A stretch of 64,000 bases of DNA. It comes from Euprymna scolopes. Its lineage: Eukaryota. The translations under genes and the position numbers were made by a program. Positions 11,926 through 61,161 of this stretch are shown here, piece after piece. The stretch lies in NCBI GenBank assembly GCA_053919585.1, contig CM132809.1. One strand, 5' to 3'. A model generated the notes under the pieces. It did not search any database, had not been told where the DNA came from, and was given only the letters and a program-made list of their open reading frames with translations. The stretch's first letter is position 1. Every line of letters begins with the position of its first letter.

Positions 11926-12437
11926 TTCGAAAGTATTTTTTGTCTTACTTGGAATAATAAAAAAAATCCTTGATTTGAATAAAGTTTTTTTTTAAAATTT
12001 CATTGAATCACTATAATTTGCTATATATAGTAGCTATTTTTGGAATATTTTTAAATAATGCAATGTTTAAATTTTGTCTACATGGTTACGAAACAATTGT
12101 AACACATAATGAAATACAGAATATGATGTTCTTATTTTATATTTTATTGTCTTGATTTTTGCAAAATATTATACGCATGCTCCATTATAAAAACCGATAA
12201 TTATGAAGCTTAATTAATTGCGTCAATTTGTATTGACTTCCATTTAATTGGTATATGAACATTACCGAATTGTAATATACAAAAAACCTTTTAGTAAAAG
12301 TCAGACTTCCTTCTCTAATCAGATTTTTTTTCGATTGTTTAGATGAGTTTCCATTATGGTGCACCGTGCGGAAGCTCTATATGTCTCTCACAGTGATTTA
12401 GTCCGCAATAAATTGTAGTCTACATTGCACTAGAGAA

Positions 12438-12823
12438 ACCACTTGGCCTTCGGGACAAGATCAAAGTGTAGTGTCTGTTCCGGCAGATGCTGCACTTAAG
12501 ATGATTTGTACCAGTCAATGGAGGGGAAACTCTCTATACTGGGACAATTATTATTTTTGGTAACCAGAGTGCCCCCTTTTTGCCTACTTTTAGGGGAGCT
12601 GGTTTTTACCTCACATTAAAAACGGCCTTGTGCCTAATTTGCTCAGTGGGGGAGCAAATAAATACCATCTGTTCTTCAGATGCTGCACTTCTATTTCTTG
12701 TTCTCTTTCGGTGGAGGAGAAATCCTTCAGGACTGAGACAATTTTTATTTTTGTACCTTTTCTTCACGTTAAAAAACGACCCTGGTGTCTAACTCTGTCC
12801 CGTGGGGAGGCATAGTAAATAGG
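12438..12823 (+). mobile_element. U2 snRNA-derived SINE-like element, dimer (unit A 12438-12666 plus 5'-truncated unit B 12667-12823)
   Basis: Head CTTGGCCTTCGGGACAAGATCAAAGTGTAGTGTCTGTTC matches the U2 5' end; perfect 17-bp TSD TACATTGCACTAGAGAA at 12421-12437 and 12824-12840. Confidence 0.88.
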
Positions 12824-13115
12824 TACATTGCACTAGAGAATTTACTAGTGATTTTATAAAATTATATTTATATATAATAGTTTGGATTTAAGTTTTAAAT
12901 GCAAAAGTTAAATGCTTCAATTGTGCTTTAAGCAGAAACATTCATTTCGATCGTGCCCCTTTCATATGAAAGAACCCAATATTTATTTTATATGTCTGGC
13001 CTTTTGACTTGTGTTGTAATAAAATTTCTCAAATACGCTTGTAGTGTTAGGCTATGTAAGGTGTTAACTTTGTTCAAAATCGCCTATTCCTTCTTTCATG
13101 GGATTTTTTCTATTA

Positions 13116-14379: not shown

Positions 14380-14777
14380 CAAAGTGAAAACTCCTCCGTG
14401 TATGAAGAGTCCAGTTTAGAAGTATTGTTCATCCACCCAGCGTGGCTGCAGCCAAGATTGAACTCACTACACGAGTTTGTAGTGTAATTCAAATCTGTCG
14501 GTAGCTGAATAATTGATGTTTCGCCAGGACTATCAAGGGTACGTTTTCATCGTGACCCCATTACTAGATTGAGTGCCTACCACGGCTTAAGAGAGTCCGA
14601 TCAACCCTCAAGAGAAGGATGGATCGCGCCAGTTTCACAACCTGGTATTTTACCTCGCAGTACATACAGCGCCTCGACTTCCCAAATGTTCACCCATCTG
14701 GTACTGGGCAGGCTCAGCGTTGCTTAACTTCGGTGATCTGATGAGAACCGGTGTGTCAACGTAAATTGTGCCGTATT
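14380..14777 (-). mobile_element. 5S rRNA-headed SINE (SINE3-like) with Deu/Nin-like core
   Basis: Near full-length 5S-like head 14663-14777; body blocks CCATCCTTC, GACTCTCT, GGCACT, AGTAATGGGGT, GTCCTGGCGAAA in Deu-domain order; 3' boundary approximate. Confidence 0.7.
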
Positions 14778-15117
14778 GAAAGAGGCACTGTACTTTTTGA
14801 TATTGCGTGTGAAAGGAAGTTTACGGAAGAAGGACATGCAAAGAATGTTAGAAAGAAATCTCCATGGGTGGAGGAAGTAATTTCTGTGGTCATCTGGAAA
14901 AAAGCGGACTCAGTTTGTTAGTTTTAAAAAATTTCATTGTTCACAAGAAAACGGCAAATGCCGAAAATGATTATAGTTAATTTCGTCTGAAACGGAAATC
15001 CACATTTAGGTTCCCTAAATGAAAAGGAAATACTCCAAAGAAATATTGCAAGAGAGAAATAGTGAAGGAAATAATTGGATTAAAAAAATGTAAGCAATCT
15101 ACGCAATTTTCTTACAG

Positions 15118-24912: not shown

Positions 24913-25154
24913 GAAGTAATAATTAATGTTGATCCGGGGTTATTTTAATTGAAACTTTTTCTTTAAATTATAAATTATATATAATAGTAATGGAAAAATA
25001 TTAATCAATGCTGTTGTTTTCTTGTTTGTCTTGAAATATCTATAAATCTCACATAGAGATCAAGTGTTAGCTCCTAGGAATCGGGGGATCTCCGGTACTA
25101 TAAATTAGATACAATATAATATTCAATAGCAGAATTGGCTCTCTGCATGAATTA

Positions 25155-25213
<59 letters not shown>

Positions 25214-25633
25214 CAGGGTGACCCCCCCCAAAAAAAAAGAAAAAAAAAGCTAAATGGAGGCCATCTAGAACATATGCTGTAGAACGGAGAAAAAAGGCCA
25301 AAGACCCTTGTGTTTTGATGTGATGTTTTGAATATAATAAACTAGTTATGACCAAAGTTTCATTTCATTCGGACAAAACGCTAAGAAATGGAGCCTAATT
25401 AGAGTTCCTATTTACAATGTCTCCCCACGGGACAGGGTTAGACACCAAGGTCGTTTTTTAATGTGGAGAAAAGGAACAAAAATTAAAATTGTCTCAGTCA
25501 TGAATGATTTCTCTTCCACTGACAGAGAACAAGAAATTGAAGTCCAGCATCTGAAGAACAGATACTACACTTTGATCTTGACTCGAGGGCCAAGCAACCT
25601 AATTAGAGTTGAGCCCGGGTTTTTGGGCCACCC

Positions 25634-58898: not shown

Positions 58899-60450
58899 CG
58901 AGGTGCTTTCAATAAGTTTCCAGACTTTTCTGTAGAGGCATTTAAGATTCGCGTAGACTCTTGAAAATTCAATATGTTATTGCTATACATCTGAGATGAC
59001 TGGCCAATTTTTACGATTTCGTGTTCAATGGAACAGCTACAGAAGGGATTGGAATGCATCCCACTAAAGCATGATCATCACAGCTGGTGAATTTCGAAAA
59101 TGCAATCTGGACGCGAGGATACTAAAATAAAAAATGATATGCAATAAAATTCTGTTTTAAACTTGGAAAAATGCTACAAAAACGTATGGAATGCTTCTGA
59201 CCGCTTTTGGACCATCTTGCATGAATCTATTATCAGTATCATAAGAGATTCAGGGAAAGCAAAGGGTCTGTGAGAGATGATTAGATGTGTGGGAGGAGTA
59301 AAGAAGTCAGAACACCAGAGTTGATTGATCAAATAAAGAATTTCATGGATAAGGACCGTCGTGTGTCTATAGAAACAATAAGTGCACAGTTTGATGCCAG
59401 TGGGTGAACTCTACACACAATTATTCGCGAGGAATTGAAAGTGTGGCAGATTTGCTTGAATGCATCAGTCCACAACTCCATTCTTGTCACAGACTGTTTG
59501 ACCAAGATGGCCATCAAGACAATTCCTCACATTTCCTATAGTCCAAACCTTGCTCCCTGTGACTTTATGTTCCTATTTACAATGCCTCCGCACGGGACAG
59601 AGTTAGACACCAGGGTCGTTTTTTAACGTGGAGAAAAGGAACAAAAATAAAAATTGTCTCAGTCGTGAAGGATTTCTCCTCCACTGACAGAGAACAAGAA
59701 ATTGAAGTGCAACATCTGAAGAACAGACACTACACTTTGAGGTATTTATTTGCTCCCCCACTGAGCAAATTAGGCACAAGGCTGATTTTTAATGTGAGGA
59801 ATGAAGGGGAAATGGATACCAACTCCCCGGGGAGTAGGGGAGTTGGATAGTGACAATTGGCATGAAGAGTTGCCCCTACATATGGTCTTTGCTTGCAGTA
59901 TCTGCCGGAACAGATACTACACTTTGGGATATTAAATCTTTTATTCATGTTAAAAAATACAGTCAAAATCAACGATGAACAAAAAACTTAGGCACATGGC
60001 CAACTCAAAAGGGGGGATTTTGGGGGTCGTTGGTCATCCTTGTCACTCCAGAACTAAACAAAGTCAGAAATTTCTCCCAGCTAGTATCTTCTTTCACCAT
60101 AATAACGCATTCACCCTTTCATATTTGGGGACGTCCTACTTAACTCCCAATTTTTAAAAACATTTTTTATTGACGTGTAAAAACAGAAAAGATAACAATA
60201 AAATGGTACAATTTTGATCTTGTCCCGAAGGCCAAATGTTATTCCTTAAGCTCAATGAAAACCTTAGGCGCTGTTCTTATGAGACAACTGAGGAAGTGAA
60301 AGGGGTTGTGAAGAGAGTCATTGATACTCTCGCAGAAGGTGACTTCAATGGTGCCTTCCATAAGTTGTTGGAACGGTACAGCAAGTGAATTGCAGGAGGA
60401 AGAGATTGCCTCGAAGGAGACCATGCATTCTGTTTCACTTTTAAATAAAA
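58899..60450 (+). mobile_element. Degenerate mariner split by a U2-derived element
   Basis: TA-CGAGGTGC TIR; YSPNLAPCDF ends at the insertion point and the mariner sequence resumes at 60241. Confidence 0.88.
59572..60235 (-). mobile_element. U2-derived SINE-like dimer (unit B 59572-59740, unit A 59741-59926, foreign insert 59927-60212, head remainder 60213-60235)
   Basis: Two CAAAGTGTAGTRTCTGTTC blocks; TSD ATGTT at 59567-59571 and 60236-60240; precisely interrupts the mariner. Confidence 0.88.
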
Positions 60451-61161
60451 TAATTGAACATTTTATATCTATATCATTAATTACTAAAATGAAAGAGAAT
60501 GTTTTTAAATTGCAACAAAATGTACATTACATAAAATAAATCCAAGGTAATTTTTTGATTCAATTTAAATTAAATTTTTATACCTTACTTTGTAAAATTT
60601 ATAAAAGTACACTTTGAAGATAAATAAATTTCAAATTGAATCTTGTACCTTTATTTTTAAAGCCTACAGTGAAAATATTTTGTTTAACAATTTTCCTGCC
60701 TTGGATGAAATGCTTTTCTAACTTGTATCTTATCTTTTTAAGATAATATTTTAAAACCTTTCTGCTCTCTATTTCAGTTTGTATTTCTCCTCACACACCA
60801 AATCATTTTTGCAACCCCTTCTTTGTATTATTACAGGTCTTAATATTCTCTCTGTTCAGTTTGTATTTCTCCTCACACCAAATCTCATTTTTGCAACCCC
60901 CTCTTTGTAATACAGATCTGAATAATGAGAAAATCTGAATTTTTTTAACAAAAACTTAAAAATAACTTTCTTAAATTGTTTTAAACTTCTTTCAGAATAG
61001 AAAATCTTTAAAATTTAATAAGGAACATATTTCATATAGGTTTTATTAACACATATTCAGTACATAACGAGAAAAATAGAGATGAAAATTTCAAAAGGAC
61101 TGTATAACTGGTTACGGTCAATAGTAGTTCTCACCAGCGAATATCTTTGTTATTGTTTTTC

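What the first reader, a model, noticed from the sequence alone, without database searches (positions are those of the whole stretch)
12421..12840. U2 snRNA-headed retroposon family, three TSD-flanked insertions in 64 kb
Seen: insertions at 12438-12823 (+), 25407-25597 (-) and 59572-60235 (-) start with a U2-like 5' end (CTTGGCC..AAGATCAAAGTGTAGTATCTGTTC). They share a body and a non-poly(A) tail (GTAAATAGG) and have TSDs of 17, 13 and 5 bp. Two interrupt other transposons. Known: most SINEs derive from tRNA, 5S or 7SL RNA; U1/U2-derived SINEU was described in crocodilians. Inference: this is an abundant, independently evolved snRNA-derived SINE family in an invertebrate. It has no evident internal A/B boxes, so how it is transcribed is an open question.
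Basis: partly seen in the sequence, partly recalled or inferred. Interest (0 to 1): 0.85.

Follow-up and report, generated by a model that had tools for sequence, protein, structure and literature searches.

The report
U2-headed retroposons tied to U2-homing LINEs
These are copies of a very abundant short jumping element of a large mollusc genome; its first ~44 letters come from U2 spliceosomal RNA, apparently inherited from LINEs that insert into U2 genes, which suggests where such snRNA "heads" come from.

Summary
All three insertions exist at the stated coordinates. Each carries a head matching host U2 snRNA nt 5-48, including a 28-nt exact run. The 17-bp and 13-bp TSDs are exact; the 5-bp one is weak.

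The family is very large. Two head-body junctions give about 40,800 (beta) and 35,900 (alpha) genomic hits.

Only B (25407-25597) is a single unit. A is an alpha+beta dimer. C is a stack: head fragment, a 289-nt LINE 3' end, then alpha2 and beta.

Beyond the head there is no detectable U2 similarity. Rfam U2 scores 17-24 bits against 161 for the true gene.

The true U2 genes form a 764-bp tandem array. That array holds intact 7-kb LINEs (endonuclease, RT, zf-RVT; nearest reviewed relative Xenopus Tx1). They are joined to U2 nt 47, where the SINE head ends.

One of these LINEs shares three things with alpha: the terminal AAATACC, a 3' box and the ATC(T) target. That target is the published Keno site in U2.

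Alpha and a third LINE insert into U2-like heads, which builds the stacks. Beta inserts at AAC sites.

I read this as a mollusc counterpart of crocodilian SINEU/Tx1, not an unexplained new class. How it is transcribed remains inferred. The scan had already reached the same reading on other windows of this genome.

The parts
12421..12437 (+). Left copy of the 17-bp target site duplication of insertion A (TACATTGCACTAGAGAA).
   Evidence: It starts with TAC, one of the beta-type target starts (AAC 31, TAC 8, TAT 4 of 45).
12438..12666 (+). Alpha unit of insertion A. It holds 4 extra nt, then the U2-derived head (12442-12480), a body, and a tail ending ...GCAAATAAATACC.
   Evidence: It is 97.8% identical to the alpha consensus. 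The alpha head-body junction has 35,907 genomic hits.
12442..12480 (+). U2-derived head of A: stem-loop I plus the branch-point recognition region, equal to host U2 nt 8-46.
   Evidence: 39-nt alignment with 35 matches to host U2, including 24 consecutive. Rfam U2 scores 17.3 bits, E 0.42.
12667..12823 (+). Beta unit of insertion A. It lacks the first ~31 nt of its head and begins at ATCTGTTC, joined directly to the alpha tail. It ends ...GTAAATAGG.
   Evidence: The junction TACC|ATCTGTTC recurs in 39 of 71 alpha-type tails. Diagnostic changes are shared with other dimers (L060, L069, L072).
12824..12840 (+). Right copy of the 17-bp TSD of insertion A.
   Evidence: Contig depth falls about 250-fold after 12827.
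25407..25597 (-). Insertion B: a single full-length beta unit of 191 nt. It has the U2 head, a hairpin that pairs the branch-point region, a T-rich middle, a 3' hairpin and the tail GTAAATAGG.
   Evidence: It is 94.8% identical to the beta consensus. The beta junction has 40,771 genomic hits.
25598..25610 (-). Upstream copy of the 13-bp TSD of B (AACTCTAATTAGG).
25394..25406 (-). Downstream copy of the 13-bp TSD of B.
   Evidence: This flank belongs to another repeat family (2,161 first-look candidates).
60213..60235 (-). Head fragment at the 5' end of stack C (TTGGCCTTCGGGACAAGATCAAA), equal to U2 nt 9-31.
59927..60212 (-). The last ~289 nt of the 3' UTR of a third LINE ('gamma'), inserted into a U2-like head in front of (C)AAAGTG.
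   Evidence: In L080, L085 and L086 the same sequence follows an ORF2 C-terminus that is 55% identical to the array LINEs. All 11 fetched copies are followed by AGTGTAGTATCTGTTC.
59741..59926 (-). Alpha2 unit of stack C. Its head starts at CAAAGTG. It has a different middle and an alpha-type tail ...GCAAATAAATACC.
59572..59740 (-). Beta unit of stack C. Its head starts at TCAAAGTG and its tail is GTAAATAGG.
   Evidence: 92.9% identical to B.
59567..59571 (-). AACAT, repeated at 60236-60240: a possible 5-bp TSD of stack C, with weak support.

Best explanation
**What it is.** The three loci belong to a family of short, non-coding, LINE-dependent retroposons of the SINEU type. The first ~40-44 nt are the 5' part of the host's U2 snRNA: stem-loop I plus the branch-point recognition region, U2 nt 5-46/48.

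**Where the head comes from (inferred).** The head is the leader of Tx1/Keno-like LINEs that home into U2 sequence. Such a LINE, inserted in a U2 gene, is transcribed from the U2 promoter. Its RNA therefore begins with U2 nt 1-47.

**How the short elements relate to the LINEs.** The short elements keep three things: that leader, a short structured body, and a LINE-type 3' end (a GGCCTTGTGCCTAA box, a hairpin, and ...AAATACC or ...AAATAGG). The LINE proteins copy them in trans by target-primed reverse transcription.

**Target sites.**
- Alpha-type units, like LINE-b, are primed at ATC(T). This includes the ATCTGTTC of U2, which is the published Keno/Utopia site.
- Every U2-like head is therefore a landing pad. 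New units and LINEs insert into old heads and reuse the upstream head part.
- This builds head-to-tail stacks such as A and C, and some of these stacks then move as units.
- Beta-type units use another 3' end and land at ordinary genomic (A/T)A(C/T) sites, mostly AAC, with 10-21-bp TSDs.

**Shown:**
- the head homology;
- the copy numbers;
- the TSDs;
- the target preferences;
- intact LINEs in the U2 array with the same leader junction;
- the 3' end and target shared between LINE-b and alpha.

**Inferred:**
- that the head originated from the LINE leader;
- that these LINEs mobilise the units;
For: **Head**
- Alignment to host U2 nt 5-48 scores 58 against 14 +/- 2.3 for shuffles. It includes the protostome-type extra A found in the host gene.

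**Family size**
- Junction hits at up to 3 mismatches: 40,771 (beta) and 35,907 (alpha). Reversed controls give 0.
- Sampled copies are 96.4% (beta) and 98.5% (alpha) identical to their consensus.
- TSDs of 10-21 bp were found in most of the 30 beta loci.

**LINE link**
- Two U2 units of the 764-bp array on C9 read U2(1-47)|LINE|U2. The 5' junction ...ATCTGTTCT|CAGTGC is the same in two LINEs that are only 74% alike.
- Both LINEs have open ORF1 and ORF2, with Exo_endo_phos, RVT_1 and zf-RVT domains.
- The best reviewed structural relative is Xenopus Tx1 ORF2, E 4.5e-63.
- The head-plus-LINE junction occurs 1,885 times on many chromosomes, so the head travels with the LINE.
- LINE-b in the array carries a head variant (GGTCAAG) that is absent from the neighbouring genes and typical of beta.
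- The box GGCC(T)TGTGCCTAA is present in the 3' UTRs of LINE-a, LINE-b and gamma, and in the alpha tail with a 17-nt exact match.
- LINE-b tails end ...TAAATACC and are followed by ATCTGTTC (11 dispersed copies) or ATCGCTTC (12 copies, in U2 arrays and unplaced contigs). Alpha ends ...ATAAATACC|ATCT.

**Self-targeting**
- Of 71 non-redundant alpha-type tails, 48 are followed by ATCT. Of those, 39 are ATCTGTTC inside a U2-like head.
- All 11 gamma LINE ends lie inside a head.
- LINE ORF2 copies occur at about 7-kb tandem spacing.
- Published 3' flanks of Keno and Utopia begin at U2 nt 39 (PMC4640811).

**Not pol III**
- There is no A/B box pair, and T4-T5 runs lie inside both units.

**Precedent**
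- Crocodilian Tx1-Mar LINEs share U1/U2 heads and target preference with SINEU (PMC4494074).
Against: - No LINE with the full alpha or beta tail was found. The sharing with LINE-b is limited to the head, a ~14-nt box, the last 7 nt and the target. The body between head and tail matches no LINE that I hold. The partner of beta is unknown.
- No SINE body was found behind the U2 promoter-proximal sequence (0 hits). No alpha was found inside a genuine U2 gene (0 hits). The proposed promoter-linked source copies were therefore not seen in this assembly.
- Most SINE heads differ from the genuine U2 in stem-loop I (UUCG loop, GGG[A/T]CAAG). Heads are thus inherited from SINE or LINE masters, not copied afresh from U2 genes. 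Only about 480 alpha and 450 beta copies have a genuine-like loop.
- The Tx1 clade assignment rests on one structure search and on domain content, not on a tree.
- RNA evidence is contigs only, in both orientations and inside longer contigs. That fits passenger transcription and shows no discrete RNA.
- The loci sampled were the best matches to the window copies, not a random sample.
Confidence: 0.78

Rival explanations
1. An autonomous-style SINE unrelated to the U2-homing LINEs. In this reading the head was captured once by template switching onto a U2 snRNA, and the element is transcribed from an unrecognised internal promoter in the head or body. The LINEs acquired their U2 leaders separately.
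For: - No promoter-linked master copies were found.
- The body has no match in the LINEs held.
- Tens of thousands of young copies suggest efficient transcription.
- Kojima considered template switching for the birth of SINEU.
Against: - The head ends at U2 nt 46-48 in the SINE and nt 47 in two divergent LINEs.
- Template-switch products normally carry the snRNA up to its 3' end, not its first 47 nt.
- Head variants, the 3' box, the terminal AAATACC and the ATC target are all shared with LINE-b.
- There are no A/B boxes, and internal T runs are present.
Confidence: 0.12
2. Insertion A is not one retrotransposition event. In this reading a beta inserted first, making the 17-bp TSD, and an alpha later landed in its head at ATCT. 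The alpha reused the upstream part of the head by homology.
For: - Alpha-type tails are followed by ATCTGTTC of a head in 39 of 71 cases.
- Such in-situ stacking is needed to explain the gamma LINE ends inside heads.
- This route would leave exactly the structure seen, with a single outer TSD.
Against: - The beta part of A shares diagnostic substitutions (CTTCTATTT, CTCTTTCGG) with the beta part of other alpha+beta dimers at unrelated loci (L060, L069, L072). It does not share them with monomeric beta.
- This points to a dimeric master copied as a unit through its beta tail.
Confidence: 0.25
3. The copies are independent chimeric retrocopies, like the U6-L1 chimeras of mammals, and not an amplifying family.
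For: Junction positions between units vary somewhat in stacks: ATCT, TCAAAG and CAAAGTG.
Against: - About 77,000 copies share two fixed head-body junctions.
- The heads have their own diagnostic variants, distinct from the U2 gene.
- Subfamilies, including dimers, share mutations.
Confidence: 0.02
4. The elements are variant U2 snRNA genes or U2-like functional RNAs.
For: - An Sm-like AUUUUUG motif is present.
- The length is about 190 nt.
- Stem-loop I is retained and the branch-point region is conserved.
Against: - Rfam U2 scores 17.3 and 24.4 bits, against a threshold of 46 and 161 bits for the true gene.
- The post-head region is no more similar to U2 than shuffles are (395 and 242 of 1000 shuffles reach the score).
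- The branch-point region is locked in a 12-14-bp hairpin in the predicted fold.
- The copies have TSDs and are dispersed in about 77,000 copies.
Confidence: 0.02

Closest known systems
SINEU (SINEU-1/2/3 of crocodilians; Kojima 2015, PMC4494074)
   Same: - Short non-coding retroposons whose head is a 5' piece of U1 or U2 snRNA.
- No pol III promoter, and internal oligo-T.
- Dimeric and 5'-extended forms exist.
- The Tx1-group LINEs of the same genome carry the same snRNA head and share the target preference.
   Different: - The host is a mollusc, not a crocodilian. The sequence is presumably unrelated (not testable here).
- There are about 77,000 young copies (96-99% identical to consensus).
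- The partner LINEs still sit in the U2 gene array, and the alpha units still use the U2 site. Crocodilian SINEU and Tx1-Mar prefer a Mariner transposon instead.
- The head itself is the target, which gives mixed stacks.
- Here there is a shared 3' box and a shared terminal heptamer with a LINE. For SINEU-1 no LINE with the same 3' end was found.
Keno (U2 snRNA gene-specific Tx1-clade LINE; Kojima and Fujiwara 2004, as cited in PMC4494074 and PMC4640811)
   Same: - The LINEs encode an AP-type endonuclease and are inserted in U2 snRNA genes.
- The 3' flank of alpha units and of dispersed LINE-b copies begins at ATCTGTTC, at or within 1 nt of the published nt-39 site.
   Different: - In the array, LINE-b abuts U2 nt 1 and LINE-a abuts nt 22. 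A third LINE targets nt ~29-32.
- The elements are hugely amplified outside U2 genes (22,071 first-look ORF2 candidates), because their own heads serve as targets.
- Keno has been reported from vertebrates, lancelet and hydra. I found no report from molluscs.
R2/R1-type co-transcription with the target gene
   Same: The element has no promoter of its own. It relies on the promoter of the multicopy RNA gene it sits in, and carries target sequence at its 5' end.
   Different: Here the target is a pol II snRNA gene. The carried target piece is retained in dispersed copies and in a non-autonomous family. Co-transcription itself is inferred, not shown.
L1-mediated U6/snRNA chimeric retrocopies
   Same: An snRNA sequence is fused 5' of another retro-copied sequence, within one TSD.
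   Different: Those chimeras carry the snRNA up to its 3' end, have variable junctions and do not amplify. Here there is a fixed 5' fragment of U2 and a fixed junction in tens of thousands of copies.

Membership tests
SINEU | The head is derived from a U1 or U2 snRNA gene. | tested here: met
   Host U2 was taken from the tandem array (161 bits). The head aligns to nt 5-48 with score 58 against 14 +/- 2.3 for shuffles.
SINEU | A short (<500 bp), non-coding, dispersed retroposon with LINE-type TSDs. | tested here: met
   Units are 191 and 229 nt. TSDs are 13 and 17 bp in the window and 10-21 bp in other loci. There are 40,771 plus 35,907 junction hits.
SINEU | No recognisable pol III promoter, and oligo-T runs inside. 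| tested here: met
   There is no A/B box pair. T4-T5 runs lie at 110-129 (beta) and 117-170 (alpha).
SINEU | Tx1-group LINEs of the same genome share the snRNA head and the target preference. | tested here: met
   The leader junction is the same in two LINEs. There are 1,885 dispersed head-LINE junctions. LINE-b and alpha share the terminal AAATACC and the ATC(T) target. The Tx1 label itself is only indicated.
SINEU | Sequence relationship to the published SINEU-1/2/3 consensus sequences. | not testable with these tools
   No Repbase, Dfam or SINEBase sequences were available. An independent origin is assumed from the host-specific U2 features (the extra A at nt 31).
Keno / Tx1 clade (partner LINE) | A non-LTR element with an AP-type endonuclease and an RT. 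| tested here: met
   Pfam hits: Exo_endo_phos 2e-15, RVT_1 6.5e-31, zf-RVT 1.3e-07. ORF1 has a CCHC knuckle.
Keno / Tx1 clade (partner LINE) | Specific insertion in U2 snRNA genes. | tested here: met
   L088 and L089 read U2(1-47)|LINE|U2 within the 764-bp array. There are 12 LINE-b tails followed by U2 nt 1, in the arrays and on unplaced contigs.
Keno / Tx1 clade (partner LINE) | The 3' flank begins at U2 nt 39. | tested here: inconclusive
   Met by alpha units (39 of 71) and by 11 dispersed LINE-b copies. Not met by the array copies, which abut nt 1 and nt 22, or by gamma (nt ~29-32).
Keno / Tx1 clade (partner LINE) | Placement in the Tx1 clade by RT phylogeny. | tested here: inconclusive
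   No tree was built, for lack of reference sequences. The best Swiss-Prot structural hit is Xenopus Tx1 ORF2 (23% identity, E 4.5e-63), ahead of L1 ORF2 (18-19%).
U2 snRNA gene (Rfam RF00004) | Reaches the family's gathering score of 46 bits. | tested here: not met
   Scores are 17.3 and 24.4 bits. There was no hit at the gathering threshold anywhere in the window. The true gene scores 161.3 bits.
Classical pol III SINE (tRNA, 5S or 7SL head) | Internal A and B boxes, or a 5S/7SL-type internal promoter, in the head. | tested here: not met
   There is no B box at up to 2 mismatches. The single A-box-like string lies in the alpha 3' hairpin. Rfam finds no tRNA, 5S or 7SL in the elements.
Template-switch snRNA chimeras (L1/U6 type) | An snRNA present up to its 3' end, with variable junctions and no amplification. 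| tested here: not met
   Only U2 nt 5-48 is present. The junction is fixed in about 77,000 copies.

The most novel reading that the evidence does not exclude
The snRNA 'head' is not a promoter module. It is the co-transcribed target flank of a U2-homing LINE. Once carried along, it serves as landing pad and as 5' homology guide for further insertions. The LINE and its short derivatives thus create their own target (about 77,000 extra U2 sites against about 1,200 U2 genes) and build mixed arrays. One derivative, beta, has escaped to ordinary genomic sites. This would give a general, testable origin for snRNA-headed SINEs.
Probability: 0.55. Interest if true: 0.7.

Novelty: new variant of a known kind. 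Interest (0 to 1): 0.6.

Why it matters
In the library I searched, snRNA-headed SINEs are described only from crocodilians. There, their birth and their transcription were left open.

This genome offers all the stages side by side:
- intact U2 genes;
- open-reading-frame LINEs inside them with a U2(1-47) leader;
- dispersed LINEs that keep the leader;
- short derivatives that still home to the U2 site;
- a derivative that no longer does.

The 'target flank becomes SINE head' idea can therefore be tested directly.

The same arrangement explains the head-to-tail stacks that look like odd arrays in many windows of this genome. It also matters for annotation. The family accounts for roughly 16 Mb, my estimate from the junction counts times the unit lengths. 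Its U2-like heads could be mis-called as U2 pseudogenes.

Tried and rejected
- **Rfam U2 family search of the whole genome.** It failed twice. I replaced it with pattern searches. The vertebrate-type U2 motif gave only degenerate copies. Adding the protostome extra A found the true array.
- **U2 similarity beyond the head.** I tested for an Sm site and stem-loops. It is not above shuffles.
- **Source copies.** A search behind the U2 promoter-proximal sequence gave 0 hits. A search for alpha inside genuine U2 genes also gave 0.
- **A LINE with the full alpha or beta tail.** None was found among the held loci.
- **Homologous ORF2 proteins from other assemblies**. Two contigs that could be read (L090, L091) show no U2 head or 3' box. 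One large assembly gave gene layout only.
- **RNA evidence.** All the RNA-labelled runs that hold the element are kept as contigs. They show presence and element borders, but no transcript ends or strand.
- **Literature.** Searches for SINEU, Keno or Tx1 in cephalopods and molluscs found no description of this family. They found only a general mention of L1-Tx1 repeats in coleoids.
- **Empty-site reconstruction for C.** This was inconclusive. The two flanks hit different sets of loci.
Full report
**1. The observation**

- A (12438-12823, +) lies between two exact copies of a 17-bp duplication.
- B (25407-25597, -) lies between two exact copies of a 13-bp duplication.
- C (59572-60235, -) lies between two AACAT. 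This carries little weight. Most beta-type tails are followed by AAC in any case (31 of 45), and both flanks of C are ends of other repeats.

The head string AAGATCAAAGTGTAGTATCTGTTC occurs twice in the window at up to 3 mismatches, and never in 100 shuffles.

Contigs of four public runs pile up on A. Depth jumps in the bin starting at 12432 and collapses after 12827, which confirms the borders independently.

**2. The head is U2; the rest is not**

The genome is 5.9 Gb in 925 contigs. Run labels say mollusc.

The vertebrate-type U2 motif finds only degenerate copies. With the extra A of protostome U2s, the motif finds about 1,200 copies. Most lie in a 764-bp tandem array on contig C9. A unit of that array scores 161 bits with Rfam U2.

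The SINE head aligns to nt 5-48 of this gene:
- 44 nt, of which 28 consecutive are identical;
- score 58, against 14 +/- 2.3 for shuffles.

Downstream of the head neither unit is more similar to U2 than shuffled sequence (395 and 242 of 1000 shuffles reach the score). Rfam U2 gives only 17.3 and 24.4 bits, against a threshold of 46. These are therefore not U2 genes or whole-U2 retropseudogenes.

**3. Anatomy of the family**

- Beta (= B) is 191 nt: head, then CAGATGCTGCAC, which pairs with the branch-point region in the predicted fold, a T-rich middle, a 3' hairpin, and the tail GTAAATAGG.
- Alpha is 229 nt. It is homologous to beta along its length (score 54 against 16 +/- 2.2), has a ~42-nt insertion, and ends GCAAATAAATACC.
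- Alpha2 has the alpha head and tail but another middle.
- A is alpha followed directly by a beta that begins at ATCTGTTC.
- C is 23 nt of head, then 289 nt that are the 3' end of a LINE ('gamma'), then alpha2 from CAAAGTG, then beta from TCAAAGTG.

So only B is a plain copy.

Junction-specific patterns give 40,771 beta and 35,907 alpha hits at up to 3 mismatches, with 0 in reversed controls. Sampled copies are 96.4% (beta) and 98.5% (alpha) identical to their consensus. The sample consisted of the best matches to the window copies, so it is biased.

Neither unit has an A/B box pair. Both hold T4-T5 runs.

**4. LINEs in the U2 array carry the same leader**

The array has gaps of about 8 kb. 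Two of them were fetched. Both read U2 nt 1-47, then a 7.1-7.6-kb insert, then U2 again.

The two inserts are only 74% alike in their core. Both nevertheless start ...ATCTGTTCT|CAGTGC, within one or two bases of where the SINE head ends.

Each has an open ORF1 of 766-880 aa (a CCHC knuckle in one) and an open ORF2 of 1145-1149 aa with Exo_endo_phos, RVT_1 and zf-RVT domains. A model of ORF2 (pLDDT 83) is closest to Xenopus Tx1 ORF2 among reviewed proteins, ahead of L1 ORF2.

The two LINEs differ at their 3' junctions:
- LINE-a ends at U2 nt 22.
- LINE-b ends at U2 nt 1. Its upstream head has the variant GGTCAAG, which its neighbour genes lack and which beta has. The head therefore belongs to the LINE RNA.

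In agreement, the head-LINE junction occurs 1,885 times on many chromosomes, often in pairs about 7.5 kb apart. The ORF2 C-terminus has 22,071 first-look candidates, many with full open frames.

**5. The link between LINE and SINE**

All three LINE 3' UTRs hold a box GGCC(T/A)TGTGCCTAA. Alpha has it too, with 17 nt identical to LINE-a, and beta has a diverged form.

LINE-b tails mostly end ...CGATACGACTAAATACC. They are followed either by ATCTGTTC (11 dispersed copies) or by ATCGCTTC (12 copies in the U2 arrays and on unplaced contigs). Alpha ends ...ATAAATACC and is followed by ATCT.

Head, box, last seven bases and target are thus shared. LINE-b or a close relative is the likely driver of alpha. 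I found no LINE with the complete alpha or beta tail, and the driver of beta is unknown.

**6. Target choice and stacks**

Among 71 non-redundant alpha-type tails in the held loci:
- 48 are followed by ATCT;
- 39 of those are ATCTGTTC inside a U2-like head.

In two monomeric alphas the 18-bp TSD begins with ATCT, so ATCT is target sequence.

The published 3' flank of Keno and Utopia insertions begins at U2 nt 39 (PMC4640811). That is this site, to within a base.

All 11 gamma LINE ends are followed by AGTGTAGTATCTGTTC of a head that belongs to an alpha2, a beta or another LINE.

Beta-type tails are never in heads. They are followed by AAC (31), TAC (8) or TAT (4) of 45.

Heads are therefore landing pads, and stacking in front of old units follows.

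The beta half of A shares diagnostic changes with other alpha+beta dimers at unrelated loci. A's TSD also starts with TAC. A was therefore most likely inserted in one step as a dimer, through its beta tail. For C, I cannot tell stacking in place from transposition as a unit.

**7. Transcription**

This part is inference. The LINEs in the array lie behind intact U2 promoters, so a U2-initiated co-transcript would explain the leader.

For the short units I found no copy behind the U2 promoter-proximal sequence. I found no alpha inside a genuine U2 gene. Most heads have their own stem-loop I variant. About 480 alpha and 450 beta copies have a genuine-like loop.

Public RNA runs hold the element abundantly, but as contigs, in both orientations and within longer contigs. 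That fits passenger transcription and proves nothing about source copies.

**8. Comparison with what is known**

Kojima (2015, PMC4494074) described crocodilian SINEU with these properties:
- U1/U2 heads;
- recurrent 5' additions;
- dimers;
- no pol III promoter;
- Tx1-Mar LINEs, sister to Keno, with the same heads and the same target preference.

He left transcription open and suggested dependence on flanking promoters.

The present family fits that kind. It differs in four ways: the phylum, the scale, partner LINEs that are still resident in U2 genes, and the use of the head itself as the target. I found no description of it in the searchable literature. I could not query Repbase or Dfam.

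Other follow-ups of this scan, on other windows of the same genome, reached the same reading. My tests were made independently of them.

**9. Verdict**

It is best filed as a new variant of a known kind. Interest is moderate to high, because it makes the origin of snRNA heads testable.

Noticed in passing
window 14661-14778 (-): A 5S rRNA match (60.7 bits, full length, several broken pairs) is followed by unrelated sequence. It could be a 5S pseudogene or the head of a 5S-derived retroposon.
   Followed up: no
L088, L089 (G000:C9:168875600-168885599 and 168917500-168927100): The true U2 genes form a 764-bp tandem array, with about 1,200 hits of the motif genome-wide. The array is interrupted every few tens of units by 7-kb LINEs with open ORF1 and ORF2. 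Identical ORF2 copies also occur on C2 and on unplaced contigs C433, C713 and C759.
   Followed up: yes
L080, L085, L086 and window 59927-60212: A third LINE ('gamma', ORF2 55% identical to the array LINEs) has a 3' end that was followed by the U2 head remainder AGTGTAGTATCTGTTC in 11 of 11 copies. The site therefore differs from that of LINE-a, LINE-b and alpha.
   Followed up: partly
L032, L033, L035: Other dispersed elements have a U2-like head without the extra A (GATCAAGTGTAG) joined to different bodies. Rfam U2 scores them 46-55 bits. L033 also has an alpha-like tail variant ending AAATACT. These are possibly older headed families.
   Followed up: no
ENA assembly ERZ21867824, 31.5-kb contig: A 62%-identical ORF2 in another public assembly sits in head-to-tail ORF1/ORF2 repeats with a period of about 6.8 kb. 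This is the layout expected for self-targeting LINEs. No DNA could be read.
   Followed up: no
window 25150-25406, 59300-59571, 60236-60500, 12150-12299: Four other repeat families flank the insertions, with 2,161, 7,046, 3,599 and 2,507 first-look candidates and 81-95% identity. None was identified.
   Followed up: no
L036-L039: Dispersed U2 copies are 87-93% identical to the array gene. Two of them lie next to LINE ORF1 fragments. They are probably U2 pseudogenes or old targets.
   Followed up: no
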